A stretch of DNA of 64,000 bases from Phallusia mammillata (GCA_965637545.1 OZ281494.1:16368001-16432000); one strand, 5' to 3'; shown: positions 1 to 52,915, counted from the stretch's first letter. Numbers and translations: made by a program. Notes: a model not told the origin generated them from the sequence alone.

Positions 1-15
1 GGACAAATAATTTAC

Positions 16-1604
16 CTGCACTGGTGTATTGCTTTGTTGTTTTAGCGGAACATAGTTGGTTGTCCAGTTTACTCGAATGGTGTCAGGGTTGCAAGTAGAA
101 GGGCGGGCGTTTACTGTAACTAAAAGCAAGCAAATTTAATAAAAGAACGCTCGAAGTTTGAAAAACTTATCTGTTGAGCAACTTATATGAAAGAAACGGC
201 AAGCACTGTCTTCAGCAGCTTTTTTTTCGATAACTACTAATTGAGTAAACAATATTAGGAACTGAGGATACGTAAAACAAATTAGCTAACTGTAACTTAC
301 AACCATCGATTATATATTATTATACGTCTTGCAAACAAACACCAGACAGAAGATTGTTTCGGGGATTCGCAAGAAAAGGGTTTAAGACCACTGTATCACA
401 GCGTAGGGAAGTATTATCTTTAGTATCATGGTTCATTGTAACTTACATTCTAACTGACACGCATAATACCCATATACACCAGCACACTTCTTTGAGGTAT
501 CTACCCAAGCTTGTTTATATTGCAGTGCGCTTTGCATGCAATCCGCTGAATCAGGCTGTGTTGCTTGATAAGTTTCCACAAAAACTCTAAAAACTGAAGA
601 AAAAAACAATTATTTTATTTTAGATGTTTTAAATTTATTACTAAAGAGTTTCAACAAAACAATTGTGAGTTGTATTCACAATAACGCTAAGATCTTTTCT
701 ACTCTTGAACTTACCAGGTAAGAACAAAGATTCCCATCTTATATAATACGGCATCGAATTGTTGTCTGTGCTTTTCAACATCGAAGAATGATCGTTTGCT
801 CGGTAATTAAAAACTTCCTTAAATTTTGTTACATCATTCCCTGTTCCACCATACAAAGCAAATCCCTGAGACCATCCTGGTGCAGAAAATTTTTGTTGCA
901 AAAATAGGCGGTTTTCAAAACGTGTTATAATTCACCTCCTTCATCATTGCAATTTGTTTTTGATGTTATCCACCACCTTTTATTTTGTATGTGGTCCTGT
1001 ATTCTGCAAAATTTTACCGGCTTCAATCCCGTACCACTTCTGTAACAATGGTAACTTGTTATGATGTCTGTAGTAATTTTAACTTAATGCTTACGTTTTA
1101 TACAAATGAATAACTTTTGTAAAGTTCTGGGGTTGCGTGGTAAAATACCCCAGTTTTGCTCCACCAATGTTTGATATCCATACATTCTGTACATCTACAA
1201 ATAATCATGAAATAATATGATTCTACAAATAATACAAATAAAACAATTTACGCCTTGTTTGTTAAGGGCGACAGAACAACCTGATTTCAACTATTTAAGC
1301 GTCTACACCAACCTCCTAAATACATTTTAGTTGCAGTGCTGATGAGGCTTTCACGAACGGTTGGATTGGAAATATTGGCAATTCGACCTCCTTTTTCAGC
1401 ACATCTTAATTTTGCTGTGTTTCCATCGACAACTTCTGTTGACAATTTGAACACATGATTTCCAACACTGAACCCGGAGTTGCACGTTTCTGGTGAAGCA
1501 AATGATTAGTTTACTTATTTTCTTAATAAAACCTAATTTAAGTTTGATATACCTTGAGCATGTGCCCCATAACCTATCATTAACAAAAGCAGAAGGATTT
1601 CCGT
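16..1604 (-). CDS. Gene Y1 (5' part, runs off the window's left edge): CTLD-like/FN3 type-I receptor, near-identical to Y2; start codon is ACG instead of ATG
   Basis: Hand-spliced exons: signal peptide (T)EILLLLLMIGYGAHAQG; ETCNSGFSVGNH...CAEKGGRIAN; DVQNVWISNIGG; exon 936-1039; GWSQGFALYGG...LFLP; exon 447-593 QPDSADC...[20 protein letters not shown]; FN3 start exon 16-119. All junctions are GT-AG and phase-compatible. Confidence 0.8.
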
Positions 1605-3327
1605 TGTACCAGTTCTGTAAGCAACTTAGCACCTAAGCCTCTTATCCATATTCATAACAAGGAAATGCAGTTCTAAATGATGCTGAAAATTTTGGCAGCC
1701 TCACTTATTCTTTAGTGCTACTACATGCGTCACCTTTGGGAAAGTATTGTTTCTCCTTCACGGAAGCATCGGTTTCACGACGTCATTAAATGATGAATCA
1801 TTAAAATGTGGTGCGCCACTTTCATAAGAGTAGTGGCAACTTTTATCATAACACTTACTGTTTAAGAAACCTTTTATCTGATCCTCATACCGTTACAAGG
1901 AAAATAGGCATAAGGAATGCTCAAGATTTCGGCTGGGCTGCGACTTCAAACTTACTTTCGCCCCCTTCTGGAAAGTTTTAGCACATGCTTGATGGCAATT
2001 TAGAATAAAACCAACTACTGTTAGTGACTACAATGTGCCTTAACATTTATTCTGGTAAGACAAATAATGTGTTCACTTATTTTCTTTACAAAACCCTCAG
2101 TTTTTATCTTGCGAAATAATAATAACAAAGGCAGAATATTTATGATTGCAACTACTTTCTTTTGATTTGCTCTAAGAAACCGTACATCTATTTCTTAAAG
2201 CATCAACAACAAGGAAATGCAGTCAAGGGGAATGCCAAACATTCCCGTTTGACCATGTTTGGCGACGATGCAGCAATGTTTTGTGGTGCGTCATGTCATT
2301 GTCATTCATACCTTGAAGTAGACACAAGCGGAAAATGGTTTTAAGTTGGTACATAAACATCTTACTTATAATCACACATTCCTGGTAAATTTGGAAACTA
2401 GACCCAACCGAAATTTAAAATAAAATTGACTACCAAGTTGGTGAAAAGCGTTTGGCTTGACAATAGCCATGACAATAAGTTGGAGTTCAAAAAGTTTATT
2501 TAACTTTTGGTAAAACTTGCTTTCAGACTACGCTAGAGGTATAGCAATTGTCAGAATGACACGATTGTTGTTTCTACTATCTTTACGGCAAACTTTTTTT
2601 GCTTCTGATACCTTTCAGTAAACATTTTTAAGTCGTCTTCCTTTTTTTGTTTGTTTATACTCTAAGATTTGAGGGATACATAAAACCTTTAAACGAAGCC
2701 AGTATCTTTAAATAAAGTTGACAAGTTTTAATGCGAGTAAAAAAATTGCAACTGCTTGGTGGCGTTTTATAACAAATCATTTTCTGGCATTTCGATATTC
2801 TGCTTAAGCGCAGACCACGAAGTCAATTTTTAAACTTCCAAGACATTGGCTACCACACAATCTTCCACAGCAGTTGTTAACCATTTCTTTTCACTGGCAA
2901 TTTCCAAACATAAATTGTTTGATCTCTTTAGTAGCACAACACCTCCGACTGTGTGTGAATTCAATTGTAAGTTATTGGTTGTTATTCGAATTTGATGCTG
3001 CCAAGATTTCATGTTAAACGTACTGAATTTTATTCACGTTATTTTACTTTCGACAAACAGTTTAATGATCAATTAATATAGATTCTTTGTTCCAAAAGAG
3101 TAAAACAGAGATATTTTGAAAGTTGTTGATAACTTATTCTTTATTTTCATAATTTTAGTGCTGCTTATAATTATTAACAAATACAAATTCAAAACATAAT
3201 TGTTTTGTCGTTTTGACAATCATAATAATAAAACATGCTGACGTTTCGTTCAATTTCAAATTGAAGGAAAAGTTGTAGTAAAGTGATACATTTATGGATA
3301 AAATAGCGATGATAAAAAGCGTCACAC

Positions 3328-6300
3328 TTAATAATTTTCATACACAAAAACTTTGTTAGGTTCTTCGTAATGATGGCAGTAATCTGTAAAACAACATGTC
3401 GGTAATGGGTTCTGAGGCTTTGGTAGGTGGCGCAAAGGGTTCAATTATTGATTACCAGCCATACATGGGTGACGATTTTAGGTTAGAAACTAAATGTTTA
3501 AAGTTAGTTTAATGCTAGTTAAATATTAATATATGCAAACTGATTAACTATATGCGCTAGTATTTTTTGAGTAATATCATTTTAAATGTGTTTTAGTCGT
3601 CTTTGCACTACTTACCGAAATTAAGCAAAATATGAGGCTGCCGCGACGTACGGTGATATTACAATTTTGGTACCTTAGCCAAAAATTGATAAGCTAAAAA
3701 ATGTCACAGAGAGCGGAATAACCAAATTACCAGTAAGACAGCGGTTGGGAACTTATTTTATAGAAAATTTAAAAGTATGCTTACAAATAGGAGCAAGTGC
3801 TCTTTACAATAAAACATATTGGTATTTAGTAAATTTGCACGGTTTGGTGTTGTTGTATTTTCTTTACTAAAGGCACATATGTGACAAAACACCGCACAAT
3901 TTGTAGGTATATACTTATACCTTTGTTGTCTGGTGCTGTGTTAATATATTCAGGTTGCCTGATGTCGACAGTCTCATATCCATCATCCCCTACATACGAA
4001 AAATATTTTAAAAAGAATTATAGTTAAAAAGTAAAAATTATTAGAAAGTAAAGTCTACAACAATGAAATGCTGATGTTTAAAAATCAAATTGGGCAAAGT
4101 AAAAACGTTTTACAAAGGGTTGCTGTATGATAAGTCAAGTAAGTTATATCGTTTTGGTAATATACTTGTAATTTCTCATTTAACCGGTAGGCCTATGTTT
4201 TGTGTACAAAACAAATTTGTGTTTTTTATTTATTAAAACCAAATACTATTTACCTTGAACGGTTTGCGGTATTATGGTGGGAGTTACTTGATTTCTTTTT
4301 CTAAAACAGATTTTTGTAATCGTTTGTAGCTTGAGGCTATATTGTTCAAGTTTGTTACAATTGCATTAAAATATTGCGGAAATACAGTTAAAAAATGAAA
4401 ATTTGCTTACCTGGTCAATATACAAACAACAACCAAAAGTAAAATGATCAGGACTAATCCAGCGACAGCACTTACTGCGTAAATGTACGCAGGCGTTTCT
4501 ACAATAAATGTTTGAGATACTCTCAATGTTTTTGAGTTTCGATCCCGTAAAAAATATTTAGAAAGTTTTACCAGTAACGTTTTTGCTTCCCGAAATGTTG
4601 ATGCCACAACTTCCTTGCATCAAACGTGCATTACTTTCTTTACCACACATGGTAATTGCGGATATCTATAAAATGTAAAGTACAAATGGGCTATGTTTGT
4701 TGAATTAACAAAAATTAAAAACTGTAGTTATTGAGCACTTGCCGCACAAAACGTATTAATAAAATAGAGTCGCCGCTTTTATAATACGAAATATAAAGTG
4801 GGAAGATTTTTGCGTAGGTGGCAATTCAGGCCTTTGGCGCACGCACGTTCTAGCACCAAAGTGAAATTACGAAGCAACTGTGCCATAGCTGGAAAGACCA
4901 GCCAGAGCTTCTGGCAGTCAATGGTCGGTACACATTTTTGCATTGCGCAAAATGGCAATATTATCCTGCACTTCGGTATGTAGGCCCAAATCATATTCGG
5001 TGAAAAGTAGACGTGCCTCTTTCTTTCGTAACAGAAGAATGAAAAATATTGGGAAGGGTAAATACACAGGGTGTAACTGCTTTGTAGGAGAGAATTCTAC
5101 CAACCGCTCGAAATGACCAGGGGTTAAACTGCATTTTAAGATTTACCTCAAATGGTCTGTCAAACTTGTTCCCTTGTATCGTCAATTTAATTAAATGATG
5201 TGGAATGTAAGGCATCACCATTGAGTCATTTGTTCCATTCCCTTGTGAAATGCCGTAAATCTAGAAAGTCAAAAGTTAGTTGACAAGATTAGACATAAAA
5301 TGTCGTGTTATGCCCTTGACTTATTGTACCTAATTTAAATGTTCTAAACATTAGGCTACATGCAGCGGCTGTGTCACATTTCAACAGTTGTCTTTTTTTT
5401 GTTTCATGGGAGTCAAACAGTAAAATAATCTATCTTTTTCTGTAGTTAAATTTCAGACAAACTGCATTTACTTCATTCTGAGTTTTATTACCCTGAAATG
5501 GAAAACCGAAGCAAGCTGCATCTCGTCGTGATTAAGAATCTCAAGTGAACAATTTCCGATTTTGGATACTTTAGCCAAAACAAATGGAGGCGGCCTTTTT
5601 CGCTTGATTGTTTTCCCGGGTATAGTGTTTGATCGTATTTCAGTACAAGCGTCCAAACGCAAAATTGCCTGAAAAATATTTTTTGTACTGATACTAATTT
5701 TGTAAACAATTTGTTTTGCAATAGACACGCGCCGCGTAGGCCTACCGTTATATTGTATTGTTTTCCTGGTGACAAACTTGCCAAACCTGCACGAAAATTG
5801 TTGTAAGGTTGAGTAAAGGCCCCGTACGAAGTCGTATCTTCCGCAGCTCTGATCTGTGACAGAAAAGTTAAATTTGTTTACATTGCAACTCATGTTACAC
5901 CAAACTTGTCTCGAAAGGTTCAAGCTTATAAACAAATTCGGCAAATTTGGTCTAAGAAAAATACCCGGCAGAATGGAACTATGTACGTATTATATGCATG
6001 TAAACTCGTTTCTGACATTGTTGATATTGGGTAATGCATAAACTGTAACAATCATAAAAATTGCAGACCCATTGCTCGATTTTCGTAGAGAAGATGATGA
6101 ACGTTGTATAAAATCGCCTGTGTATAAACCTAGTAGTGGGACGAGATGTAATCGAAAGTTAACTTTACCTCAACCCTGGAGCTCTTGTTTCCTGGAAACA
6201 TGAAGTGGTTCCATTTGATTAGAACAGTTTCCGGGTTACATTTTGTCGACGTTGCATTAATTGTGACTGGGGACAGATAAGATTTGAAAGTTTTTGTGGT

Positions 6301-8794
6301 CTTTACAGCATGGTTCACTTTTAAAAAGGCTGGTTCCTTTATGTCAGGGGTGGGCAACCTTTGTCACTGTGGGGCCAAATGCAATTGCCAAAATTAGATC
6401 GCGGGCCCCACCTTTATATAACACAAGGTGATTTTACTTCGTTGCATACTAAAAATGCCTTACTACAAGTAAAATTCGCATTTGATTCTAGCAGCATATT
6501 GTCTGGTCGCAGAAAAATAGCACCGGGCGCACTAATCTGCTCAGAAAATATAACAATTGGACTCCTTTGCCAGTACATTTGAAACCAAAAAGTGTCTCTG
6601 CGGGCCGCACAACTTTAAACAATTGGCCGCAGGTTGCCCACCCCTGCTTTATGTTGTCCGTTAAAAATCCGTCATATTTCGCATGATTGCGCTATACTCT
6701 AAATTTACCAAAAACTCTTGAAATATTTTCACTTTAGTTGGTTTGTGACAAGGCAACGTTTAGGGAAGAATGACTTACATTGCAGTTGACAAACGTAGTA
6801 AGCTAATTTGCCATTGCAAGGGATGCTTTCCATTTTCCATGTGCTCCCATAGTGAAGCACTGCTTGCTGGCAGCCGTTCTGCTTGGCCGGTATCGCCAAA
6901 TAAGCACGAGATGTGTTACTCCAGCGCCAATTCTTTGTTTGTACATTGTACCTTGCTCCGAATATGACGTTGACCACTGTGAAATAAAAGTTTTATAAAA
7001 CATGGGCTTACTGGGCAACCGGACATTTTGTAAAAAAAACTTGAATTTACATATGTGTCATATTTAAAAAAAAGATTTTGCCTAATTGTTATATTAAGTT
7101 GGTTAACAATGTTTGGTTCTATTACCTGGAGTTAGAAATGGCAGAACAAGAGCGTCCTTTACAAATGTCTCGTTTACAGCTTTCCTGTAAAGTCGTGTTG
7201 AATAGTCTTTTTGAGGTACGACATAAAGTTTCTCGACGTATTTGTTCTCCTGTGTTGCCCCGTACATACTGAAATCTTGTTTCCAACCTTGAAGATGGCA
7301 ATTGGTGTTGTATGAATTTTACTACAATACGTGCTATCAATTTTAGAACACTGCAATACGCACCAAAATCGCAACTTGTGCCGACAAAAATTGCAAATTT
7401 CTCATATTTTTCATGACAAAATGAGATCCGAATTCGACCTTTCGCCCATCTGCGTTCAAAATAAGATATCAGATTGCAACAGCAGTCCAGAGCTGATTAG
7501 GCATCATTAACAAATTCAATGAAACTAACTTTAAAACTTAGTTTCTCATGTCAATTTTGTTGAAAACCTACTTCCTATCCCTATACTCTTGATTGGCTAA
7601 AAAAATAATTTAGTTCTTACAGAAATACAATTTTGCATCACTTAAAAACAGTAAAAGAATTATAAAACTTGTGTCACCAACATCTAAGCAAAAAAGGTTT
7701 ACGTTTTGAAAAGTTTGAAAGAGGCAATATCCGACGAGTTAGTTACTCTGCTCCACTGCGAAACGTGAGACAGACGAGAAAAACGGTAGCTTCCCTTCGA
7801 ATTGTGATATACGTAAACAGTTTGAATTTCTGCATGAAAATATGTTTTTAGTCATACTTGTCAAAAGTGTTAACAATCAATGATGCACAGAGCCCCTTCA
7901 AAACGATAAAGAACATTCGCCTAAAAGAATTAAACATTTCAGCGAAATTTGTCATAGATCCATCGTGGTTGGTTTCGCCCCGATTCGCAGAATATTTAGG
8001 CCAAACATATCATTCTGCAGTTACCACAAAACAAAGCGCGCCACATCTACACTAAAAAGAACTATGGCATGTTTGCGCACCAATTTTAATATAAACGCCA
8101 CTGTTTTCTAAACGGCAGCGACATTTCATTAATTCTTATTAAAACACTGAAAGAAAGTTTAAAATCGGCCAAGTCTTGCTAATGCTTAAAAAAGTGACAT
8201 TGTCAAATCCTAGTATAATTTACCTTGGGCGTATTTCAAATTGCTGGCACGCACGACTGCCTGAGTAATTGAACGGTTATCCAAGAATGCTAAACTGCCG
8301 TTCATATTGGAGCATTTCTTTTCAGCTGTTAAAGCATCGCTCATGAAATCTGATAGAACAAAAAGCCTGTTCCCGATTGAAGTGATTCCTCGACTACAGC
8401 CAGAAGCCATTGTTTGGGCTGCAAAAAAATCAACATTATCATCATCTTTTAATTCCTTCAGTTTTACGCGAAACCAAGTAAAACAATATTTTCTTAACAA
8501 CGTTTATAATGAGTTTTCGTAGTGTTTATTTTGATCGGCAGTAGATGTCGTAGCAAAGACTGGCACTCAAAAGCAATTAAAACTTAAAAATGGCGTTCCG
8601 CAAAGAACACGGTTTAAAAATCCGACTGTTTTTAACATCCCGAGTCATAGTAACGACTCGCAAAACTTTAGGATATCCTCTTTAAGGAAACTTACGTTTA
8701 GCTTGATAAAAATCTGACATTTATACTCACCTAAAACAACTCGTCGACAAAAACATGCCAAAAACAGAAATGTGCATCTGAATATAAATTGCAT
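3328..8794 (-). CDS. Gene X1: 15-exon type-I receptor with divergent double CTLD-like and FN3-like ectodomain, TM and a short multi-tyrosine tail
   Basis: Signal MQFIFRCTFLFLACFCRRVVLG; CTLD halves GCSRG...KKCSNMNGSLAFL and IFGARY...WRWSN...GCQQ...WKMESIPCNGKLAYYVCQ; FN3 LASLSPGKQYNIT; TM exon 4411-4498 YIYAVSAVAGLVLIILLLVVVCILT; tail GDDGYETVDIRQPEYINTAPDNKDYCHHYEEPNKVFVYENY*. All phases close without stops; extra micro-exons in the tail cannot be excluded. Confidence 0.8.
6345..6646. mobile_element. hAT (Charlie-type) MITE in an X1 intron
   Basis: TIR CAGGGGTGGGCAACCT / AGGTTGCCCACCCCTG with a perfect 8-bp TSD CTTTATGT; also present in copy B. Confidence 0.9.
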
Positions 8795-8953
8795 GTTGAC
8801 TTCTGTAGCTAAATTTCTGTTCACTCCTTCATTGTACTTCAATCAAAAGTAAACACTCTACTGGCGTACAAAGTTCTTAATTTTAGTTTGTTCGTAATTT
8901 TTCATTACAGGCTTCGCGCTACAAGGCGTAAACCATCGTGTGCTGTGTCATAA

Positions 8954-15500: not shown

Positions 15501-17466
15501 GTTGAAAATAAACACTTCTTAATTTGGATTGGTCATGATAATAATTACACATAACTTTCAGGTCCAAAACTTTGTAAATCATTTTAAGTACATATATATT
15601 TTAAAATTACATCAAAACGACAGCTTTTTTTCTGGCACATAAGACAATATGAGCAGTGGGCCTTAATTATTACCTTCCGGGCCTATATACCTTCAGGTAC
15701 CTTAATTTACCTGCACTGGAGTGTTGCTCTGTTGTTTTAACGGAATATAGTTGGTTGTCCAGTTTACTCGAATGGTGTCAGGGTTGCAAGTAGAAGGGCG
15801 GGCGTTAACTGTAACTATAAAAGCAAGTAAATTTATTAAAATAACGCTCAAAGTTGGGTTATAAGTGTTACGAGCTGCACTTATATGGAGAAAACGGTGT
15901 GCACTGTCTGCAGTAAGTTGTTTTTAGATAACTACTAATTAAGTAAACAATATATAAGAACTGAGGATACGTAAAACAAATTAGCTAATTATAACTTGCA
16001 ACCATCGATTATATTATTATTAGTCTTGCAAACAAACACCAGGCAGAAGACTGTTTTCACTTTCACGCCTCCTATGTCAGCGCTTACCAAACTGCTATGT
16101 ATTAGAAATTTTCAATTACCATAGGTTTTGACTATAAACGGAAGCTTTCGTTTTGATAAGTGAATCTAATTGCCTACCTCTGCTCAAGACCTTTTGTGCA
16201 AAATAATAATTTCATAGGGGGCGATTTTGATTCAGAGTCAAGGGGGACGATTCGCAAAAAAGGGTTTAAGACCACTGTATCACAGCGTAGGTAAGTATCA
16301 TCTTTAATATCATGGTTCTTTGTAACTTACATTCTAACTGACAAGCATAATACCCATATACACCAGTACACTGCTTTGTAGTATCTACCCAAGCTTGTTC
16401 ATATTGCAATGCGCTTTGCATGTAATGCGCTGAATCAGGTTGTATTGCTTGATAAGTTTCCACAAAAACTCTAAAAACTGAAGAAAAAAAAACAATAATT
16501 TTCATTTTAGATTTTTTAAATTAATTACTAAAGATTTTCAACAAAACAATTATGAGCTGTATTCGCCATAACGCCAAGATCTTTTCTACTCTTGAACTTG
16601 CCAGGTAAGAACAAAGATTCCCATCTTCTATGGTACGGCGTCGAATTGTTGTCTTTGTTTTTCAACTTCGAAGAACTATCGTTTGCTCGGTAATTAAAAA
16701 CTTCCTTAAATTTTGTAACATCTATACCGCTTCCGCCATACAAAACAAATCCCTGAATCCAACCTGGTGCAGAATTTCCTTGTTGCAAAATTAGGCGGTT
16801 TTCATAACGTGGTACAACTCACCTGATTCATCATTGCAATTTGTTTTTGATGTTATCCACCATCTTTTATTTTTTAAGTGGGCTTGTGTTTTGCAAAATC
16901 TTACCTGGTTCAATCCCGTGCCACTTCTGTAACAATGGTAACATGATATGATATATGTCGTAATTTAACAGCTATTTGCGTACGTTTTATACAAATGAAT
17001 AACTTTTGTAAATTCCTGGGGTTGCGTGGTAAAATATCCCAGTTTTGCTCCACCAATGTTTGATACCCATACTTTCTGTACATCTACAAATAAACAAAAG
17101 CAATTTACTCCTTCCTTGTTAAGGGCGACAAAACGACCTGATTCAATTATTCAAGCGTTTACACTAACCTCCCAAATACATTTTATTCGCAGTGCTAATG
17201 AGTTTTTCATGAACGGCCGGATTGGAAATGTTGGCAATTTGGCCACCTTTTCCAGCACATCTTAATTTTACTGTGTTTCCATCGACAACTTCACTCGACA
17301 ACTGAAATACTTGATTTCCTACATTAAAGATGGAATTGCAAGTTTCTGGTGAAACAAGCAATTGATTAAGTGTGAACCCTGCAAAACCCTGTTCGTTTTT
17401 ATCCTTACCTTGAGTATTAGCTCCGTAAAATAATAACATTAACAACAATAGCACAAATATTTCCAT
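9528..17466 (-). CDS. Gene P1: ~30-exon receptor-type protein tyrosine phosphatase (CTLD-like x2, FN3-like x2, TM, ITIM-like motifs, active D1, degenerate D2)
   Basis: Signal [20 protein letters not shown]; TM exon 13611-13722 [26 protein letters not shown]1 motifs: [46 protein letters not shown] (split 11465/11403), MVQSWEQF. D2 [12 protein letters not shown]-terminus [24 protein letters not shown] is typical of tandem-domain RPTPs. Confidence 0.92.
14760..15702. mobile_element. Non-autonomous TIR element inserted at TA in a P1 intron
   Basis: TA|AGGTACCTG...CAGGTACCT|TA with internal repeated GGGCCT motifs; absent from the homologous intron of Y2 (~34250) and P2 (~49285). Confidence 0.75.
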
Positions 17467-17516: not shown

Positions 17517-17530
17517 CATAACAAGGAAAT
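17517..17530 (-). promoter_or_regulatory. Invariant 14-mer (CATAACAAGGAAAT on +, ETS-like GGAA core) ~50 nt upstream of the start codon
   Basis: Identical at 1653, 17517, 28991, 35898 and 51289, each 49-54 nt upstream of the receptor start codon, with diverged flanks. Confidence 0.6.
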
Positions 17531-44128: not shown

Positions 44129-47100
44129 TTATCGGTAGTTCGCGTATAAGTCGAATGAAGAAAGATAGCCCAAAACGACACGATAACAATACTTGTACAA
44201 GTTCTGCAAAACGACACATTATTCTGTAATTATCTGACTCTCAGTTTTCATGTTGTATACTTAATATGATTATTTGCTAACATACCTCATTGTCCACCAT
44301 TTTTGGTCTCATATCCCTCAAGTCCTTCACTGTTCTGAACACATCCACTCTGTTCTCAGTCTTCAAGCGTTCAAGAATATTCACAAGTGCAATGAAGGTT
44401 CCTGTCCGGGTACATCCGTTGCTGCAAGAAGTTGGTTTTTAGATTTGAATAAAATGAACTTTGTTTTGACTTCTTAGTATTTACCTGCAGCACGCTAGTA
44501 TACTGCCTTCTTGTCGTGAGGGGTTTGTTGCCAAAGTCAAGTTTATTATTTCTATCATAGTGGAATCGCTGGGAGGCAACTCATCTTTCATCCAACCGGT
44601 AACTTGGATCATAATCAATTTTGAAACACCCTGTTGACAAATGGATTTAATAGCAAAATATAACAATTAGTGTTCAAAACTATTTGTTATGCAATAATAG
44701 AAATTGCAAATTCCAGTAATCTCTTGTTTTTGAATACTGTTATTGTAAGCATGCTACGCCAAAAGTTGGCATGCCTTGCGAGGGCCAGAGATCTATTTGT
44801 GTTTGGGGTTGTTTAATAATGTACTGTTTACGTACCAAATGTTTTAATTTGGATGAAACTGTCACTGGTACAACTTGATAACCGTTGTAGCTTTTTGATT
44901 TTCCCGAGGCCACTTGTATCTCTCCATACTGTGTAACTTTGCCATCTCTTGCAACCTGTACGTAAACACCAAACAACTAATAGGAAATTGCGCTTCTAAA
45001 GAGTTTGTTTACCCTTTGATTGCTTCCTAGTGAAACGATGACTGATAGATTTTTGTTCAATACAATCATCCAAAACTCTTCATCATTGACGCCAGGCTGG
45101 TAAGATGCAGAAATGAAACTCTTTGAACAACCAAGATCCTGAAAGGAAACGGCGGAAATTTTGATTGACGAGCATCAAACGAAAGTTTACAGAGAAACTT
45201 TGAGCATCAAGCGAATGTTCACACAAAACACAATGGTGTAAATAAAGATCTCATCTAAACTTAAACAAGCTACTTTCGACCAAAATACGTACACCACTTA
45301 TATAGCTGAGTTCACAAGTTGCTTGGTAAGTCGTGGGCCATTAGTAAGGCATTGTAATGAATGTCGATTGGTTTTGAGTGTAACCATAACGTGTGGCCAT
45401 AAATTTTCCCTTAAAAACATACAAAACAATTCGTTTATTCACAGTTCTACTAACCTGAATATACGAACTGGTTGCCATCGTTTCCCCACTGCTTCCTGTT
45501 TTACCTGCAACAGGTTACATTAGTAAGCCCTTTAACGAACGCGTCGAATTCAATATTATTTGTCTACCTTTGTTACTGGCGTCACTGCTGTATTGCCAAG
45601 AATCTAGCTGATTGTGCTCTTCTTTTGCTATTTTATTCCTAACAGCAAAGTCAGGTTATTTAAAAAGCCAGTTAATGTCGTATATAGCTACTTACAGTTG
45701 ATCAGTATTAAAGCTTTGCAATTCCGCAGCCGATCTGTCGCTGTTCGGGAGTGATATATGTTCGACAATAAGTTTGTGAATGAAGACAAATTGTTCCTGA
45801 GAGCAAAATAAATTTAGTTTCAAATTTGATTGCACCCTTTACTTAACAATGTATTTGTTTGATTTTACTAACCCACGATTGAACCATATCAGTTCTGTTC
45901 CTTCTCATTGCTAAAACTGTATTTGGAACATTAACTTCCCTATTGGCATCAAGTTGGTCAAAAAGAACGTCCATTGCAATGAAAGTTCCAGTGCGACCAA
46001 CCCCAGCACTGGAAATTAAAGCGAAACAATAACCTAACGTCCAAAATAAGTTAAAATGTTTTACAAACCTGCAATGAACGACAATCGGATGAATTCTATC
46101 GTGAATTTTCTCCACCATTTCACGCAAGTATATCATTGTGGACGTTGTTACCGGGATTCCGTGGTCTGGCCAAGATATGTACTGCAGCTGAACTACGGTG
46201 CGTTCCTGCTACACAAGCCAAGTTCGTGGAAAACTCCAGGCTAACAGGTGAGCAAATCCATACCTTTTTCTTGTCTGTTAGGATGAATTTTCGCTGGATA
46301 ATACCACTGAGTTTGTTTTCTTCTGTAGTGCGCAACATGAGATTGCCGTGTTGTTCCGCCTCGCCATGGTCTGGCCAGTATTTCTCGCATTTTTTCTAAA
46401 CAGAAATCAACTCGACAAATATGGGTAGAACAAAGCTTTGTGGCTTTAGGTTCTTGTTTTACAGCATTTCTCCGAAAAAAAAAAAAACACGTAAACAAGC
46501 AATCTTTAGTAGGCTATGTTTATTTCACATACTTATGCTTGTTATACGAAACGTGTAGCAAGTAAGTTAAGATAATTATATGTGTCTCTATACCTTTTCC
46601 TTTTCCTTTAATCCTGTAAGCATAACGATGATCGATGTGTTTTGTTCCCAAATCATCAGCCAAAAGTCATCGATGGTGCAATTTCTTGGTCCTTGTGTGG
46701 CGATAAACTTGTTTGGCTGGTCACAACCCTGTTAGGAAAGTTTAGGATGCAAATAAAAATTAGCCTATACTTAAAGTTAATGCATTGATTACTCACCTCA
46801 AGAAAAGAGGCATTTATATAGTCATTTTCAGGTGCAGTTTTCAGCATAACTCTAGCATGATCATCTACAAACAATAACAAAATTTAATCGTTTGTTTGTG
46901 AGAGCTTTTTAACAAAAGTTATCATAAGTTTTGCCTTTTTGACAAAGCAATTAATATTTATCAAATTAATGTTTAAATTGCACAAATTAAAGATGACCAA
47001 ATTTCATACGATACTTCATTCAGTGGCCCTTTAGTATCGAGTTAAGCCATCCATAGCTCAGTGTTCTGTGCACACGTTCAAATTTGACTAATTTCCAAAT

Positions 47101-50100
47101 AACCAAACACTATGTATAGTATACAACAACCTGCTTTTTTGATACTTGCGCTTGCATGCATTGCACGTTGTTGTAGCCTGACTTACAAGGAAATATATTT
47201 TTGTATCTGTTTCTTGCAGCGTTTGTTTCGAGTCTAGCCACCGCGTTCACTTTGCTTGCATCTGTTCCGTGCTTAGACAGTTTCTGAAATGTTCCAAGAA
47301 AAGTTAAATACACGAAAACAACAGATCAATCGTACACGGAAGTGTTTTGCCTTACGTATACATGCAAGCAACTATAGTTATCGCTATAGCGAACCATTCT
47401 AACCTTGCTGTAACAAACTTCATATTTTCGTACTGTTTCTGTGTATGTTTGGTAAGAAGGAAATACCTTACCTGCGGTTTTTAAAGTGGAAAAAACCAGA
47501 ATAAACACATCGGAACAGTTTCGATTTTTAGACAGATTGCAAATGAAATAAAACATTGTTTCCAGTGTTACCTCAAATTCTTGACGGAATGCAGCATAGT
47601 TGTTGTCGCACTTTTTAAAGTAAATTCGTTGAAGGTTTTTCTTTGGCGTTGAAGAACTGTTTCCGATATTTTGATAGGGAGAAACATTATCATATTTCTT
47701 TGCCTCTAAATAAACAAGACAGAGCAAAGATGTGTCATCTTTTTTTGCTAAAATCGTTATGTTAACTCTTTTGCTAAAATTATTCATTTTAATGTCCCAC
47801 CTGAATCAGGTGATGCGTTTTGCCCGAGTATTTCATTTGAAGAATCTCGGTTCTAAAAAACAATACACATTATAAACGTCAAACGCAGGCAAGACTTTAA
47901 GCCGAGATATAACTTTACATTTGATGCCACAGCTGTGCTTGTAGTTGCCACTGTCACACGACCTTCAGCAGTTTCCGAATCTTAGAAAAACAAACAAGTG
48001 TTAATCTTTAAATAGGTAACTTAGCACCGCAACAACTATTTCCATACCGTTTGTTTGAAAAGTGGCTCCCACTGAACTAGTTTTGTCCTTTTTGCACCTA
48101 AAACGCATTTAGTAATTCTATAATTTTAGTAGGTATGTTTTACATAGATTTTAAATATAAGTTGACCACATAAAGTATCGGTTTGTTTTTATAATTTAAA
48201 ATAAGTTACCTTTTCCAAATAATAATCACCAAGACCAGCACAAGAATGAGAGCGATGGCACCTCCAACGGCACCTGCAATTATTCCGATGGGTGCTTCAC
48301 CGCTTTCTTGCGATATTAATTCTGATTTATTATGAAATATTGTTAGTGTTTGCAAGATCAAAAAACGCTAGAAATTATTCAGTTACCAGTATTTCCTTTA
48401 CTTTGATTGTTTGTTATAGTTTGAACAGTTGTTGGTTGGATTAAAATGCAAGAACCAACTTCAACAGGACCAATGACACGTTTGCAATGCATCACGTACA
48501 ACTGAAGCCAAATGCATAGATTTAGTTACAATTACCGTAATAGGAAGTTTTATATGTTTACCTGAAATGTGTAGGTGTAAGGTTCAAGTCCAGTCAGATT
48601 AAGTATTGTGTGTCCACTTGAAACATTTTGTGTTGCTATAGGCCTAGTACCGTTTTTACCAATGCGATTGAATCTTACCTGAAAAATATAAACAATTTTG
48701 TATCGCCCATCTCTAACCACTTTTGGAATCAAAAAATTTCAAACACAAATGCATGATACAAAAAATTAGTTTTGCTTAGAACCATTCTAATAAATTAATT
48801 GGGAATGTATCAAATCTGAAAATATGTTTAAATGTATACGGCAAACTAAACCTGGTAACCATTGACTCCTTTACGATTATTTGAGGATGGAATGTAAAGG
48901 GTACAAGGAGCATTTTTTGTTATATTGGCATCAACCACCGATACAGGCGAAGAGGTTTTCACTGTCGTTTGGGCAACAACTGTTTCGCATCCTGCAACTT
49001 GCGATGTGAGCTGTCGTAAACAAATACCAATAAAAAATATTGTATGAAATATACGATGAAGTTCTGTTTGAAAATAGGTTTAGGTATTTGCACCACTTTG
49101 ATAAACTTCTGAAGATATGTGGTATACCTCAATTTGGTAAATTGTGTTGTATTGTAATCCTCCGATTGAAGTTGATGCTGCATTCGTTACAGTCGAGTGA
49201 TTGGTAGAGACAGCTTTCAACTGTAAGTAAAACAATTGATAAGTAAAAGAGCAGATAAAGTAGTTTTAAAGAATAAAATGTAAGAGAAATAATTTACCTG
49301 CATTGGAGTGTTGCTACCTGCATTGGAGTGTTGTTGTTTCAACGGAACATAGTTGGTTGTCCAGTTTACTCGAATGGTGTCAGGGTTGCAAGTGGAAGGG
49401 CGGGCGCTAACTGTAACTGAAAACAAGCAAATTTATTAAAATAACGCTAAAAAATAACGCAAAGTTGAGTTATAACTGTCACCAGCTGCACTGATAATAA
49501 CTTATATGGAGGATACGGTGTGTACTGTCTAAAGCAGTTTTTTTTTAGATAACTATTAATTGAGAAAACAGTATTTAAGAATTGAAGATACATAAAACAA
49601 ATTAGCTTACTGTAACTTACAACTATCGATTAATTATTCTTCTTGAAAACAAACACTAGGCAGAAGATTTTTTCGCTTTCACGCCTCCTATATGACAGCG
49701 CTTACCAAACTTAATTTGGTATATGTAGTGCAACTTTATGTGGAATGTATATATGGGATGTATTGTTTTCAACTCAAATGACAAAAGAAGGCGCTGGTTG
49801 CGCATAATCGCAATGTTATCTTGTCTATGACGTAACACATTCTCCTTAGATTACATTAGATAGATGTCATTTACGCTGCATGCATATTGCTGTAGCAATT
49901 AACCTAGGTTTTGACTGCTAACGGAAACTTTCGTATTGGTAAGTGAATCTGATTGCCCACCTATGCTTAATAGGCAAGACCTTTTGTACAAAGTGATAAT
50001 CTCATAGGGGGGCGATTTTTATTCAGAGTACCTAAAGGGCTAAAGCGATTCGAAAAAAAGGCCACTGTTTTACAGCGTAGGTAAGTATTATATTTAATAT

Positions 50101-51238
50101 CACGGTTCTTTGTAACTTACATTCAAACTGACATGCATAATACCCATATACACCAGTACATTTCTTTGTAGTATCTGTCCAAGCTTGTTTATATTGCAGT
50201 GCGCTTTGCGTACGACGCGCTAATCCGGACTGGTTTGCTGGATAAGTGTCCACAAAAACTCTAAAAACTAATATAAAAACATTTTTTTTTATTTAACATT
50301 TTTTTAATTTATGACTAAAGATTTTCAACAAAACAATTCACCAAAACTCTGAGATATTTTCTGACCTTAAACTTACCAGGTAAGAACAAAGATTCCCATC
50401 TTCTATGGTACGGCATCGAATTGTTGTCTTCGGTTTTTAATATCGAAGAATGATCGGCTGCTCGGTAATTAAAAACTTCCTTAAATTTTGTTACATCATT
50501 CCATGTACCGCCATACAAAACAAAGCCCTGAGTCCAACCTGGCCCAGAAATTCTTTGTTGCAAAAATAGGCGGTTTTCATAACGTGTTATAATTTACCTC
50601 CTTCATTGCATGTTGTTTTTGATGTTATCCACCACTTTTTATTTTTTATCTCGTCTATGGTTCTGCAAAATCTTATCGGCTTCAATCCCGCACCTCTTCT
50701 GTGAGAGTTATAACACATTATGATGTTTGTAGTAATTTAACAGCTATTTGCGTACGTTATATACAAATGAATAACTTTTGTAAAGTTCTGGGGTTGTGTG
50801 GTAAAATATCCCAGTTTTGCTCCACCAATGTTTGATACCCATACTTTCTGTACATCTACAAATAATCAAAAGCAACTTACAAATTCCTTGTTAATAATGA
50901 CAACAATCTGATTTTAGCTAATCATGCGTTTACACCAACCTCCCAAGTACATTTTAGTCGCAGAACTAATAAGGTTTTCACGAACGGTTTGATTGGAAAT
51001 GTTGGCAATTCGACCTCCATTTGTAGCACAAGTTAATTTTGCTGTGTTACCATCGACTACTTCACTCGACAACTGAAAAACTTGATTTCCCACATTGAAG
51101 GCGGAGGTACAAGTTTCTGGTAAAAAAAACAATTGATTGAAAGTGAAGTTTGCCAAAACCCTGTTCGTTTTAATCCTTACCTTGAGTGTTAACTCCGTAA
51201 AACAATAACATTAACAACAAAAGCACAATTATTTCCAT
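44129..51238 (-). CDS. Gene P2: receptor-type protein tyrosine phosphatase, paralog of P1
   Basis: Signal [20 protein letters not shown]; same exon set; RNRY, WPDHG and [11 protein letters not shown] intact; D2 [11 protein letters not shown]; same C-terminus. Confidence 0.92.
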
Positions 51239-51883
51239 CACGCCTCCAACTTACTGTAAATAAAGTCCAAGCCTCCAAACTGTATGTTCATAACAAGGAA
51301 ATACTGCAAATGCGTGAGGCATGCTAACAGTGTTACGGTTGTCTTGCGTCATTGGACGACGTAACAATATTGTGTGGTGCGTCATGCACATTCAAAGACA
51401 TGGCACAAACGGGTATGGTGACTTTTGTTCGTTGAGGTTAAGACATAAATAACTGTGATTCAGTGGAGTTGCTCAGACACGTACCAGAATGTTTCAACCT
51501 TACTCATAGTGCCCACCTTTATTTATTGTAAAAGGACATTAGAACTTAGCGGTGACAAGATGTAATGACATCAGTTTTCACAGGTAAAAAAATTGTTGGA
51601 GTAGTTTTATTTGTTTGGATACATTTCGTTTCCAACAACATAACCCATTTTTATTTAAAGATGCTTTTGAAATAAATGATTACAAGCAAACAAATATTTT
51701 TTTCGTTTTTTTTTTCGTGTTTGTGGCAGCCACAGGAATTAGTTGTGTACAGATATGTAGAAAACTCGTTCAAACATAACAAAATTATAAACACCGTCAA
51801 ATATATGCTTGGACACATCAATACATTACAGCATCAAAATTATTTGATTTTTATGAGCCATAGCATTTCTGCAACGTTAACAG

Positions 51884-52915
51884 CTACATAACATCGTAAC
51901 GACAAAGGGGAACGCCCCCGACAAATGCATCAAAGTTCCACATTCCAGTGAGAGTGATTGGGACATTCGGTTTTGTGGCAACCGTCCATCCGACATTTTC
52001 ACCACGAGACCCAGGAAATCCATTGGCCCACTTTACTTACACTGGTCCGCCGTTAAGACTTTGTAATTGCCCATTCTACACAAGAACTCATATTATTTGC
52101 GGGTTGGAAGCTTGTTGTTATTCAAAACTACAGAGAAGGTTATGTAAATAGTTTCACCTGACAAGTTGACCCGAGCCAGACTTCAACGACATTGTTGGAG
52201 GGTTTGTCAATGTAGACATTCCATGTTTTTTGAACGTATGTGTACAGTACTTACATTTCTTGGGTTTCGATGTCAACCAGCGTTCCGCCCTGGTAGCTGC
52301 AGAGATCAGCTGCTGCTTGCTTGCTTCCACCCGCATTATAGGAAGCAATAATTAGCGGCAGGTGGTAGCAATATCCATTGTAGACGATTCCAGAACAATT
52401 GAGCTTGGCTTAAAATAGCGTAAAGTTTAGTGTGTAATAAATAGTTAGATTAATTGAAAAGCATGATGGCCCAGCTTTAAGATCGGCTTTGAACTTTAGA
52501 CTAATTGAGATGTTTTTGATCTATCGGCACCGGCTTAAAGTCTCTTGGATATGATAAAGCCACCGGCTAACCTCAAACACGACGTTACAGTTTTGAGGGG
52601 CATGGGCCCTGGTTGATAACCACTGTTATAGAGATTGGTCGCTATAAAAAGGCAACTACCTTGAACGATCGATTCAATTCTACGATCTATTTCACTCCAG
52701 TCAGGTCGACTAGCTTGTCCTGGAGGTCCAACCGGTCCCTGTTTTCCAGGCAGGCCTTGGGGCCCCACTGGACTACCGTTTCCGTTTTGTCGATTAAAAA
52801 TGCTTTGCACTGATCGGCAGAACATGTAATTTCCATCATTCTGTCCTTTGACTACTACCAGGCTGGTTGAAATTAACAGGCAATACAATAGCAGCATTTT
52901 AAAATGTAATCCCAT
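51884..52915 (-). pseudogene. Gene C2: mini-collectin copy with a premature stop in the CTLD
   Basis: A 3-nt deletion turns ATG TAT GAA GTA (C1) into ATG TAA GTA (TAA at 52251-53); the rest is colinear with C1. Confidence 0.82.

What the first reader, a model, noticed from the sequence alone, without database searches (positions are those of the whole stretch)
16..52915. Candidate paired lectin-receptor system: one ectodomain family wired either to a tyrosine phosphatase or to hemITAM-like tails, with a linked secreted mini-collectin
Seen: seven minus-strand receptor genes share the same exon plan through the TM (Y1 visible only as far as its first FN3 exon). P1/P2 continue into ITIM-like motifs plus PTP D1/D2. 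X1, X2, Y2 and Z continue into short tails with GD(D/G)GYE(T/S)V and other Tyr motifs. Y/Z ectodomains are close to P even in introns. Established: clustered receptors with near-identical ectodomains and opposing tails define vertebrate paired receptors (KIR, Ly49, SIRP, PILR), and DEDGYxxL is the Dectin-1/CLEC-2 hemITAM. Inference: this is an innate-immune or self-recognition locus whose inhibitory member carries its own phosphatase instead of only recruiting SHP-1/2. I do not recognise a CTLD-FN3-PTP receptor paired with a hemITAM-like CTLD-FN3 receptor as a described family, but cannot confirm novelty without a search.
Basis: partly seen in the sequence, partly recalled or inferred. Interest (0 to 1): 0.92.

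Follow-up and report, generated by a model that had tools for sequence, protein, structure and literature searches.

The report
Lectin-like receptors: phosphatase or tyrosine tail
A twice-repeated gene cassette in this (reportedly sea-squirt) genome puts a lectin-like outer domain either on a built-in tyrosine phosphatase or on a short tail of tyrosine docking sites; the layout is real and apparently unstudied, but an on/off immune pairing is not shown, and three of the nine genes are broken.

Summary
All genes lie on the minus strand, in the order collectin-like C, P, X, Y. This cassette occurs twice (C2-P2-X2-Y2, then Z, then C1-P1-X1-Y1).

- **P1 and P2** are intact (1051 and 1053 aa, 28 exons). 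They have a signal peptide, a divergent C-type-lectin-like head, two FN3-like modules, a transmembrane segment and a PTP-alpha/epsilon-type tandem phosphatase.
- **Y2** is intact (536 aa). Its outer part is 80-84% identical to P, and it ends in a 59-aa tail.
- **X1 and X2** (481 aa) share that tail, but their head is only about 30% identical to P. They are intact only if exon 2 joins exon 5.
- **Broken genes:** Z has two frameshifts, Y1 has lost its start codon, and the collectin-like copy at 52915 has two stop codons.

Substitution patterns show purifying selection on P, Y2 and X.

No tail meets the strict hemITAM or ITAM definition. The "ITIM-like" sites in P are also Grb2-type YxN sites, and the tails carry YxN too. 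No transmembrane segment has a charged residue. Four small presumed RNA runs had no contig on any X1 exon.

This scan has already reported the same family at other places in this genome. No paper describing it was found.

The parts
9528..17466 (-). P1: receptor tyrosine phosphatase gene, 28 exons, 1051 aa, intact. Head exons E2-E6 17345..16331; FN3-like exons E7-E11 15808..13787; TM exon 13722..13611; D1 12687..11092; D2 11033..9528.
   Evidence: Manual model and translation; Pfam Y_phosphatase on exons; [13 protein letters not shown] and [10 protein letters not shown] read in the translation; one GC donor just after exon 5, which ends at 16602.
44129..51238 (-). P2: second receptor tyrosine phosphatase gene, 28 exons, 1053 aa, intact, all splice sites GT-AG. 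QPD is replaced by NQSG.
   Evidence: Projection of the P1 exons. Best solved relatives of the D1 piece are PTP epsilon and alpha. Cytoplasmic part is 96% identical to P1, dN/dS 0.12.
32573..35849 (-). Y2: phosphatase-less receptor, 15 exons, 536 aa, intact. P-type outer part and TM (exon 33194..33083), then E13a 32985..32939, T1 32779..32711 (GDGGYETVDIREPVYINTAPCHE) and T2 32634..32573 (DTVHHYEDPKKVSAYENLTL, stop).
   Evidence: Outer part is 84% identical to P1 and 80% to P2; dN/dS 0.33-0.38. Similarity to P ends about 30 nt after the TM exon; T1 and T2 are 82-85% identical to X.
3328..8794 (-). X1: phosphatase-less receptor with a different head, 14 exons, 481 aa if exon 2 (8418..8224) joins exon 5 (7287..7126). 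TM exon 4498..4411; T1 3989..3921 (GDDGYETVDIRQPEYINTAPDNK); T2 3383..3328 (DYCHHYEEPNKVFVYENY, stop).
   Evidence: Exon 6 piece looks like Lectin_C to the Atlas (58 of 60 hits). No RNA contig lies on any exon.
37601..43390 (-). X2: near-identical copy of X1 (99.1% in exons, 97.9% in introns), 481 aa, intact under the same model.
   Evidence: The coding sequences differ by 4 non-synonymous and 9 synonymous changes, binomial p = 3e-4 against neutrality.
25691..28937 (-). Z: decayed Y-type copy. One-base deletions in exon 4 (28405..28303) and in the TM exon (26387..26289). T1 25759..25691 ends in a stop and its donor is lost. T2 is deleted. QPD has become QLG.
16..1604 (-). Y1: copy of Y2 (about 99% in exons), seen only as far as exon 7. 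Its start codon ATG is changed to ACG.
   Evidence: first upstream in-frame stop at 1628, no ATG before it.
18574..19555 (-). C1: intact secreted collectin-like gene, 3 exons, 235 aa. Signal peptide, about six or seven Gly-X-Y triplets, a short neck, and a lectin-like domain without EPN/QPD.
   Evidence: local lectin-domain profile 27.7 bits; Pfam Lectin_C only E = 0.084 on the exon.
51884..52915 (-). C2: copy of C1 with two premature stop codons (pseudogene in this assembly).
   Evidence: QEM*VLY after a 3-nt deletion; GGPV*VKW.
17517..17528 (-). Invariant 12-mer TTCCTTGTTATG about 50-60 nt upstream of the start codon. It also occurs at 51289-51300 (P2), 35898-35909 (Y2), 28991-29002 (Z) and 1653-1664 (Y1), but not upstream of X1 or X2.
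   Evidence: 6 matches with up to one mismatch, five of them exact and upstream of starts, against 0.62 expected.

Best explanation
This is a tandemly duplicated cassette, C-P-X-Y, of a lineage-specific family of type I surface receptors.

P couples three things: a divergent, partly duplicated C-type-lectin-like head on two FN3-like modules; a juxtamembrane pair of YxN tyrosines; and a PTP-alpha/epsilon-type tandem phosphatase. D1 has all catalytic motifs. D2 is degenerate. The C-terminus, FDLYANYR, resembles the Grb2-binding end of PTP-alpha.

Y carries almost the same head, stalk and TM as P. In place of the enzyme it has two small exons that encode a tail of four tyrosine docking sites (YETV, YINT, YEDP, YENL). 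X carries that same tail on a distantly related head. Y arose by joining a P-type 5' part to X-type tail exons, with the junction in the intron after the TM exon.

Likely working (inferred, not shown): Src-family kinases phosphorylate the tail, which then recruits SH2 adaptors of the Grb2 and Crk/Nck kind. Because P and Y have such similar heads, they would meet the same or related ligands. That would bring a phosphatase next to the docking tail and so set the gain of the signal. P could either erase the signal or, like PTP-alpha, prime the Src kinases.

The gene structures, intact reading frames and selective constraint are shown here. The ligand, the cell type and the sign of signalling are not.
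For: - Gene models with phase-compatible GT-AG exons and intact ORFs for P1, P2, Y2, X1, X2 and C1.
- Pfam phosphatase hits. Best solved relatives are PTP epsilon and alpha. [23 protein letters not shown] and the FDLYANYR end are read in the translation.
- Lectin-like head: the exon 2 profile hits only Lectin_C-rich proteins, over the N-terminal half of the domain. The X exon 6 look-alikes are 58 of 60 Lectin_C. Profile-profile comparison gives 67% probability, E = 5e-5.
- Identities: P1/Y2 84%, P1/P2 80.5%, X against P or Y about 30%, X and Y tails 68%.
- Constraint: dN/dS is 0.12 for the P cytoplasmic part, 0.43-0.47 for the P outer part and 0.33-0.38 for P against Y2. X1/X2 differ by 4 non-synonymous and 9 synonymous changes, p = 3e-4. 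Exons diverge less than introns.
- Chimera junction.
- Motif scan.
- Ascidians are reported to have Src, Syk, SHP-1, Grb2 and Crk but no LAT or SLP-76 (PMC12582321).
Against: - No RNA support. No RNA run holds 32401-38400. Four presumed RNA runs have no contig on any X1 exon.
- X needs an unverified exon 2 to exon 5 junction.
- Pfam does not recognise single head or FN3 exons. The FN3 assignment rests on motifs only.
- Z, Y1 and C2 are broken, so the cluster also contains decaying copies.
- The docking-site readings are pattern matches from vertebrate SH2 specificities and were not tested here.
- The alpha/epsilon subtype call rests on a small score margin over PTP sigma/LAR and on the C-terminal motif. 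No tree was made.
Confidence: 0.6

Rival explanations
1. This is a true immune paired-receptor system with opposite signs. P is the inhibitory arm with its own phosphatase. X, Y and Z are activating arms that signal through a hemITAM-like site to a Syk-family kinase. Together they serve innate immunity or self-recognition.
For: - P and Y have near-identical heads and different tails in one cluster.
- The variable patches lie in head exons 4 and 6, next to an almost invariant exon 3.
- GDDGY resembles DEDGY.
- Another ascidian uses ITIM and hemITAM receptors for allorecognition and has Syk and SHP-1 (PMC12582321).
Against: - The strict hemITAM and ITAM patterns are absent. Position +3 is Val, and Y2 has one acidic residue.
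- YxN sites occur in both P and the tails, and Y2 has an ITIM-pattern site.
- No TM segment has a charged residue.
- Alpha/epsilon-type phosphatases activate Src kinases in vertebrates (established knowledge).
- Outer-part dN/dS is below 1.
- No expression data.
Confidence: 0.15
2. Only the P genes matter. X, Y and Z are by-products of birth-and-death evolution in a duplicating cluster: truncated copies that are silent, or at most act as ligand sinks without signalling.
For: - Z has two frameshifts and has lost T2. Y1 has lost its start codon. C2 has two stops.
- X has unusable exon 3/4 remnants.
- No RNA contig lies on X1.
Against: - X1 and X2 differ by 4 non-synonymous and 9 synonymous changes, p = 3e-4, and their exons diverge less than their introns, p = 0.002.
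- Y2 is fully intact across 15 exons with dN/dS 0.33-0.38.
- The tail exons T1 and T2 are conserved between X and Y at protein level, although their outer parts are only about 30% identical and the intron between T1 and T2 has changed greatly in length, 537 against 76 nt.
Confidence: 0.15
3. The family serves cell adhesion, tissue or developmental signalling rather than immunity, as most receptor tyrosine phosphatases do. The head binds an endogenous matrix or cell-surface ligand.
For: - The canonical sugar/Ca2+ site is incomplete or absent.
- The FN3-like stalk and tandem phosphatase are typical of adhesion-type receptor phosphatases (established knowledge).
- The phosphatase part is strongly conserved.
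Against: - Copy number, turnover and pseudogenes fit a fast-evolving recognition family.
- A collectin-like gene is linked in each cassette.
- The head has variable patches.
Confidence: 0.1

Closest known systems
PTP-alpha / PTP-epsilon (R4 receptor tyrosine phosphatases)
   Same: Tandem D1-D2 with an active-looking D1 and a degenerate D2. The C-terminal tyrosine lies in an F-D-x-Y-A-N-[FY] context like the Grb2-binding Tyr789 of PTP-alpha (established knowledge). The best solved relatives of the D1 piece are PTP epsilon and alpha.
   Different: Vertebrate R4 enzymes have a short, domain-less, glycosylated outer part. Here it is a lectin-like head plus two FN3-like modules of about 450 aa. The score margin over PTP sigma/LAR is small and no tree was made.
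Vertebrate paired receptors (KIR, Ly49, SIRP, PILR)
   Same: Clustered, recently duplicated genes with very similar outer parts, introns included, and different cytoplasmic parts. Copies turn over and some are pseudogenes.
   Different: The short form has no charged TM residue and no adaptor logic; it carries its own multi-tyrosine tail. The long form carries an enzyme rather than ITIMs. Opposite signalling is not shown.
Botryllus fester co-receptors (FcoR), PMC12582321
   Same: Ascidian surface receptors in polymorphic clusters whose tails carry ITIM, hemITAM or hemITAM-like and other tyrosine 'core' motifs (for example [A/D]VYxxV). The motifs are swapped between alleles and splice forms.
   Different: FcoR are immunoglobulin-superfamily proteins without lectin-like heads, and none carries a phosphatase. 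Their hemITAMs end in YxxL. No sequence relation was tested.
Dectin-1 / CLEC-2 hemITAM receptors
   Same: A lectin-like head, and a single acidic-patch tyrosine (D-D-G-Y here, D-E-D-G-Y there).
   Different: Those are type II proteins with an N-terminal tail and YxxL. These are type I with a C-terminal tail, YETV, and three or four further tyrosine sites. The strict pattern is not met.
Fugu 'PTP-GMC1' entry in the catalogue of lectin-like-domain proteins (PMC514892)
   Same: A predicted protein tyrosine phosphatase is listed among proteins with a C-type lectin-like domain, next to a 'CTLD and FN3' protein. A lectin-like domain on a receptor phosphatase therefore has a predicted precedent.
   Different: It is a table entry only, without description. 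PTP-GMC1 (PTPRQ) has a single phosphatase domain and many FN3 repeats (own knowledge). No tail-only partners are mentioned.
Collectins (MBL, SP-A/D) and ascidian collectin-like lectins
   Same: C1 has a signal peptide, an N-terminal Cys, Gly-X-Y triplets, a short neck and a lectin-like domain. Ciona is reported to have nine collectin genes (PMC514892).
   Different: C1 has only about six or seven triplets, no EPN/QPD motif, and lacks one of the usual disulfides. Pfam support is weak.

Membership tests
Classical protein tyrosine phosphatase domain (Pfam PF00102), D1 | Profile match above the curated cut-off | tested here: met
   Single exons of P1 score 57 and 46.5 bits against a cut-off of 20.9.
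Classical protein tyrosine phosphatase domain (Pfam PF00102), D1 | Catalytic motifs: HCX5R(S/T), WPD loop, KNRY pTyr loop | tested here: met
   [19 protein letters not shown] and [10 protein letters not shown] are present in P1 and P2.
Classical protein tyrosine phosphatase domain, D2 | The same catalytic motifs | tested here: not met
   D2 reads [11 protein letters not shown] (CX5R kept, His lost), WMKDE instead of WPD, and has no KNRY region. Pfam gives 18.6 bits, below the cut-off. It looks like a degenerate regulatory domain.
R4 subtype (PTP-alpha/epsilon) | Closest relatives are alpha/epsilon; C-terminal Grb2-type tyrosine | tested here: inconclusive
   The top PDB hits are PTP epsilon (78.5 bits) and alpha (77), but PTP sigma/LAR follow at 75-77. 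The C-terminus is FDLYANYR. No phylogeny was made.
R4 subtype (PTP-alpha/epsilon) | Short outer part without recognisable domains | tested here: not met
   The outer part is about 450 aa with a lectin-like head and FN3-like modules.
C-type lectin-like domain (Pfam PF00059) | Profile match of the whole domain | tested here: inconclusive
   Single exons give no Pfam hit, and a spliced protein could not be handed to Pfam. Indirect support: the exon 2 profile hits Lectin_C proteins at 4e-12 to 8e-4; Atlas look-alikes of X exon 6 are 58 of 60 Lectin_C; hhalign gives 67%; the local profile is weak at 10-20 bits.
Sugar-binding C-type lectin | Ca2+/sugar site: EPN or QPD, Glu before the Cys, WND | tested here: not met
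   P1 and Y have QPD, but WVD instead of WND and Ala where the Glu should be. P2 has NQSG, Z has QLG, and X and C1 have none.
Fibronectin type III modules | Profile or fold match | tested here: inconclusive
   There is no Pfam or Atlas hit for single exons. The only support is motifs such as [25 protein letters not shown] and [12 protein letters not shown] read in the translation.
Paired receptors (KIR/Ly49/SIRP type) | Clustered genes with highly similar outer parts | tested here: met
   P1/Y2 are 84% identical in amino acids, exons 88.4% and introns 86.0% in nucleotides, within one cassette.
Paired receptors (KIR/Ly49/SIRP type) | Activating member: short tail, charged TM residue, ITAM adaptor | tested here: not met
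   The TM segments read APIGIIAG...VIIFWK and YIYAVSAVAGLVLIILLLVVVCIL and have no charged residue. The tail has its own tyrosine sites.
Paired receptors (KIR/Ly49/SIRP type) | Inhibitory member signals through ITIMs; opposite outputs; co-expression | not testable with these tools
   The ITIM-pattern sites in P are also YxN sites, and P2 lacks one of them. No expression data were obtained.
hemITAM | [DE][DE][DE]xYxxL, as defined in PMC12582321 | tested here: not met
   X has GDDGYETV, Y2 has GDGGYETV, Z has GDDGYESV (out of frame). The strict pattern has no match.
ITAM | YxxL/I, 6-12 residues, YxxL/I | tested here: not met
   No match in any tail or in the P juxtamembrane region.
Collectin | Signal peptide, long collagen stalk, neck, sugar-binding lectin domain | tested here: inconclusive
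   C1 has the right order of parts, but only about 6-7 Gly-X-Y triplets and no EPN/QPD. Lectin_C scores E = 0.084 on the exon and 27.7 bits with a local profile.

The most novel reading that the evidence does not exclude
This lineage is reported to lack LAT and SLP-76. In it, one fast-evolving lectin-like head may be wired in germline pairs to two outputs: a PTP-alpha-type phosphatase, or a LAT-like multi-docking tail. Ligand engagement would then be read as a ratio of phosphatase to scaffold at the contact. This would be an enzyme-coupled counterpart of vertebrate paired receptors, possibly used for non-self or microbial recognition.
Probability: 0.15. Interest if true: 0.8.

Novelty: new variant of a known kind. 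Interest (0 to 1): 0.5.

Why it matters
If the P and Y forms are co-expressed and see the same ligand, this would be a naturally occurring design in which the brake or primer of tyrosine signalling is fused to the receptor rather than recruited. It would be a useful comparison for how activating and inhibitory receptor pairs evolved in chordates. It also bears on kinetic models of phosphatase exclusion and recruitment at cell contacts.

It also documents a clear case of exon shuffling: a P-type 5' half joined to X-type tail exons. And it shows a lectin-like domain that is partly duplicated or split by an insert.

Its weight is limited for three reasons. There is no expression or binding evidence. 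Several copies are broken. The scan has already reported the same family elsewhere in this genome.

Tried and rejected
1. Relic of tail exon T1 in the P intron between E13a and E13. A translated stretch ([12 protein letters not shown]) looked like GDDGYETVDIREP, but the DNA alignment is only about chance level and there is no AG acceptor. Rejected.

2. Use of the exon 3/4 remnants in X. Every phase-compatible path gives a stop: TGA at the junction, or a stop in exon 6 (and reasoning from it). Only exon 2 to exon 5 keeps the frame.

3. An extra small exon in P (13b, phase 0 to 1). It is not compatible with the phase-1 end of E13a. Dropped.

4. Finding full-length relatives.
   - The exon 2 profile against 1.8 billion proteins found only generic multi-lectin proteins and one 167-aa raw ORF from an ENA metagenome contig.
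   - The word-index searches gave nothing useful because of their length window.
   - So 'shared with another sea squirt', as noted by an earlier agent, could not be checked here.

5. Pfam on single head, FN3 and collectin exons: no usable hits.

6. Atlas on two FN3 exons: no hit.

7. RNA.
   - The run search found no RNA holder.
   - Laying four presumed RNA runs on 3301-9300 gave only a dispersed repeat and one contig at 9098-9300, running on to about 9397.

8. Poly(A)-signal scan: uninformative in this AT-rich DNA.

9. Rfam and tandem-repeat scans: nothing relevant.

10. Left out: Pfam, PDB search and structure prediction of the spliced proteins. A spliced protein has no reference and long sequences are not to be typed.

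Full report
**What the window is.**
The 64-kb window is AT-rich (about 36% G+C) and has short introns. Earlier notes of this scan call the organism a sea squirt; I could not verify that. A self-comparison shows one large duplication. Bases 1-14745 match 34247-49285, at 98% over the first 7.5 kb and 89% over the rest. Bases 16113-23850 match 49896-56982 at 77-95%. Every gene discussed here is on the minus strand. In the direction of transcription the order is C2, P2, X2, Y2, Z, a LINE-type reverse-transcriptase fragment, C1, P1, X1, Y1. The unit that was duplicated is therefore a cassette of a collectin-like gene, a P gene, an X gene and a Y gene.

**How the genes were modelled.**
No gene finder or spliced aligner was available. 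I read the minus strand in three frames and fixed each exon by four criteria: splice sites, phase, comparison of the copies, and the pattern of substitutions. I then projected the exons onto the paralogues. One example of a frame choice: all three frames of exon 3 are open. The chosen frame is the only one that links in phase to exon 4, and it makes two of the five substitutions among copies silent and the others conservative.

**The P genes.**
P1 (17466..9528) and P2 (51238..44129) each have 28 exons and intact reading frames of 1051 and 1053 aa. All junctions are GT-AG except one GC donor in P1, just after exon 5 (which ends at 16602), where the intron begins GCAAGT. The parts, in order:
- a 19-aa signal exon;
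- a head encoded by exons 2-6;
- two FN3-like modules and a glycosylated stalk (exons 7-11);
- a TM exon;
- a basic exon (E13a);
- an exon starting [13 protein letters not shown];
- phosphatase domains D1 and D2.

Pfam recognises the phosphatase in single exons (2.8e-15 and 4.5e-12). D1 has [17 protein letters not shown] and [13 protein letters not shown]2 is degenerate: [11 protein letters not shown], no WPD, no KNRY region, and a Pfam score below the cut-off. The best solved relatives of a D1 piece are PTP epsilon and PTP alpha, only narrowly ahead of PTP sigma/LAR. The protein ends FDLYANYR, close to the Grb2-binding end of PTP-alpha (AFSDYANFK, from my own knowledge). P1 and P2 are 96% identical in the cytoplasmic part, with dN/dS 0.12. 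They are 80.5% identical in the outer part, with dN/dS 0.43-0.47.

**The Y and Z genes.**
Y2 (35849..32573) has the same exons 1-12 as P, with the same phases, and an intact frame of 536 aa. Its outer part is 84% identical to P1 and 80% to P2, which is as close as P1 is to P2. Exons are 88.4% identical and introns 86.0%.

Significant DNA similarity to P stops about 30 nt after the TM exon. The basic exon E13a is still P-like in pattern. The two last exons are 82-85% identical to those of X. These are T1 (GDGGYETVDIREPVYINTAPCHE) and T2 (DTVHHYEDPKKVSAYENLTL, then stop).

Y1 is about 99% identical to Y2 in the seven exons visible. Its start codon reads ACG, and there is no in-frame ATG before the upstream stop at 1628.

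Z keeps every exon open in the expected phase apart from the one-base deletions in exon 4 and in the TM exon. The exon 4 deletion is followed directly by a stop. The TM-exon deletion puts a stop in E13a, ahead of GDDGYESV. Z has also lost the T1 donor and the whole of T2, and its QPD has become QLG. In this assembly Z is a pseudogene.

**The X genes.**
X1 (8794..3328) and X2 (43390..37601) share with P:
- the signal exon phase;
- exon 2;
- exons 5 to 12;
- a basic exon.

After these they carry T1 (GDDGYETVDIRQPEYINTAPDNK) and T2 (DYCHHYEEPNKVFVYENY, then stop). Remnants of exons 3 and 4 exist, but every way of using them gives a stop. Joining exon 2 directly to exon 5 gives an intact 481-aa frame in both copies. 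This junction is a prediction.

It is supported indirectly. The two copies differ by 13 coding substitutions, of which only 4 change the protein, where 78% would be expected to do so under neutrality (binomial p = 3e-4). Exons also differ less than introns, 0.9% against 2.1% (p = 0.002). The X outer part is only about 30% identical to P and Y. The close 'pair' is therefore P with Y, and X is a second specificity with the same tail.

**What the head is.**
Pfam does not recognise single head exons, and spliced proteins could not be handed to the tools. Indirect evidence points to a divergent C-type lectin-like domain:
- A profile of exon 2 from five copies, searched against 1.8 billion proteins, found 8 hits. 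The informative ones are multi-domain Lectin_C proteins, and the match lies over the N-terminal half of a lectin domain.
- The X exon 6 piece has 58 of 60 nearest Atlas clusters in Lectin_C.
- A profile-profile comparison of the P/Y head with lectin domains gives 67% probability, E = 5e-5.

The domain is unusual. In P and Y, exons 3-4 look like one C-terminal half (VWVSNIGG, then C...WW...C), and exon 6 looks like another (QPD...C...WVD...C...YYACQ). In X, a 54-aa insert encoded by exon 5 splits a single domain.

The canonical Ca2+/sugar site is incomplete in P1 and Y, and absent in P2, Z, X and C1. 'Lectin-like' is therefore the safe word. The most variable exons among P1, P2 and Y2 are 4, 6 and 11, and exon 3 is almost invariant.

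The FN3 assignment rests only on typical strand motifs. Atlas and Pfam gave nothing for single exons.

**The signalling motifs.**
A pattern scan of the modelled proteins finds no strict hemITAM ([DE][DE][DE]xYxxL, the definition used for ascidian receptors in PMC12582321) and no ITAM.
- X has DDGYETV.
- Y2 has GDGGYETV, with a single acidic residue.
- Position +3 is Val in both.
- The tails also carry YINT and YENY or YENL (YxN, the Grb2 SH2 type) and YEEP or YEDP (YxxP, the Crk/Nck type). These readings come from vertebrate SH2 specificities, from my own knowledge.

The P juxtamembrane sites VKYGNV and SPYQNI fit the ITIM pattern, but they are also YxN sites. P2 has KKYDNV, which no longer fits ITIM. 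P ends in YANY, another YxN site. Y2's SAYENL fits the ITIM pattern too. None of the TM segments has a charged residue. The motifs therefore do not assign opposite signs to the two forms. What really differs between them is the presence or absence of the enzyme.

**Expression.**
The run search found no RNA run holding 32401-38400, which covers Y2 and the X2 tail exons. I laid four small runs labelled as probable RNA, from four studies, on 3301-9300. They gave no contig on any X1 exon. They gave only a dispersed repeat at 6344-6651, seen on both strands at 90-95% likeness, and one 300-nt contig at 9098-9300, running on to about 9397. That contig lies between the P1 stop and the X1 start. Earlier agents reported transcripts for family members in other windows; I did not test that.

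**The collectin-like genes.**
C1 (19555..18574, 3 exons, 235 aa) is intact. Its parts:
- a signal peptide;
- a Cys;
- about six or seven Gly-X-Y triplets;
- a short neck;
- a lectin-like domain with weak profile support and no EPN/QPD.

C2, the copy at the finding's upper coordinate, has two premature stops.

**Comparison with what is known.**
The searches found no paper on a lectin-like/FN3 receptor with a tandem phosphatase in ascidians. Three comparisons are relevant:
- A Fugu catalogue of lectin-like-domain proteins lists a phosphatase (PTP-GMC1) and a 'CTLD and FN3' protein, without discussion (PMC514892). A lectin-like domain on a receptor phosphatase is therefore not wholly without precedent.
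- Ascidian receptors with swapped ITIM and hemITAM tails are known in Botryllus, but they belong to the immunoglobulin superfamily (PMC12582321).
- The phosphatase part looks like the alpha/epsilon subtype, but it fails that subtype's defining short outer part.

The cluster meets the genomic criterion of paired receptors. It does not meet the criteria of a charged TM residue with adaptor use, or of ITIM signalling.

**Verdict.**
- Z and one collectin copy are broken, and Y1 lacks a start codon.
- X is a distant relative, not a near-identical partner.
- X depends on an unverified junction.

The architecture and its maintenance by selection are real. The hemITAM and ITIM labels and the immune role are not supported by anything tested here. 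The scan has already reported the same family in several other windows of this genome, so this locus adds a clean cassette structure and a clear P/Y chimera rather than a first sighting. I rate it a new variant of known kinds, with moderate interest.

I left out Pfam, PDB and structure prediction on spliced proteins, because such sequences have no reference and were not to be typed.

Noticed in passing
window 24102-24998 (+): Three overlapping, frame-shifted plus-strand ORFs in a G+C-richer patch (43%). The first has a weak reverse-transcriptase match (RVT_1, E = 2e-4). This is probably a decayed LINE-type retroelement lying between Z and the second cassette.
   Followed up: partly
window 60684-60965 (+): An ORF with a rhodopsin-family 7TM match (7tm_1, 1.4e-7). 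A GPCR gene fragment or exon lies upstream of the cluster on the other strand.
   Followed up: no
window 6344-6651 (copy in X2 intron near 40720-41020): A dispersed repeat inside the X exon 6-7 intron. It appears in many contigs of all four presumed RNA runs, on both strands, at 90-95% likeness, with unrelated flanks. It is likely a SINE- or MITE-type element carried in many transcripts.
   Followed up: partly
window 9098-9300 (contig runs on to about 9397): One 300-nt contig of run X3, about 97.5% alike, lies between the P1 stop (9528) and the X1 start (8794). It could be a long P1 3' UTR or an X1 5' exon. It is the only hint of transcription found in this window.
   Followed up: no
window 17517-17528, 51289-51300, 35898-35909, 28991-29002, 1653-1664 (-): The 12-mer TTCCTTGTTATG is invariant about 50-60 nt upstream of the start codon of P1, P2, Y2, Z and Y1, although the flanks have diverged to about 75%. 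It is absent upstream of X. It is a candidate core promoter or trans-splice element shared by P and Y.
   Followed up: partly
window 16601-16602 (-): The donor after exon 5 of P1 is GC, not GT (the intron begins GCAAGT). All other copies have GT. It is probably a working GC-AG intron, but it could weaken splicing of P1.
   Followed up: no
L001 2311-2814 (ENA metagenome contig, 2965 bp): A raw 167-aa ORF (P0004) in an unrelated metagenome assembly carries an exon 2-like stretch that is 46% identical to P1 and Y2 and runs into an intron-like GKL... continuation. It is probably host DNA of a related animal in that sample.
   Followed up: partly
window 29425-29718 and 30377-30668: A pair of direct repeats, 80% alike, in the 3.6-kb spacer between Y2 and Z.
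   Followed up: no
window 7501-7503 / 41876-42067: Identity between the two cassettes drops from 98% to 89% at a point inside the X exon 2-5 intron, where X2 has about 190 extra bases. Yet X exon 2, on the 89% side, is 100% identical. This suggests gene conversion or strong constraint on that exon.
   Followed up: no
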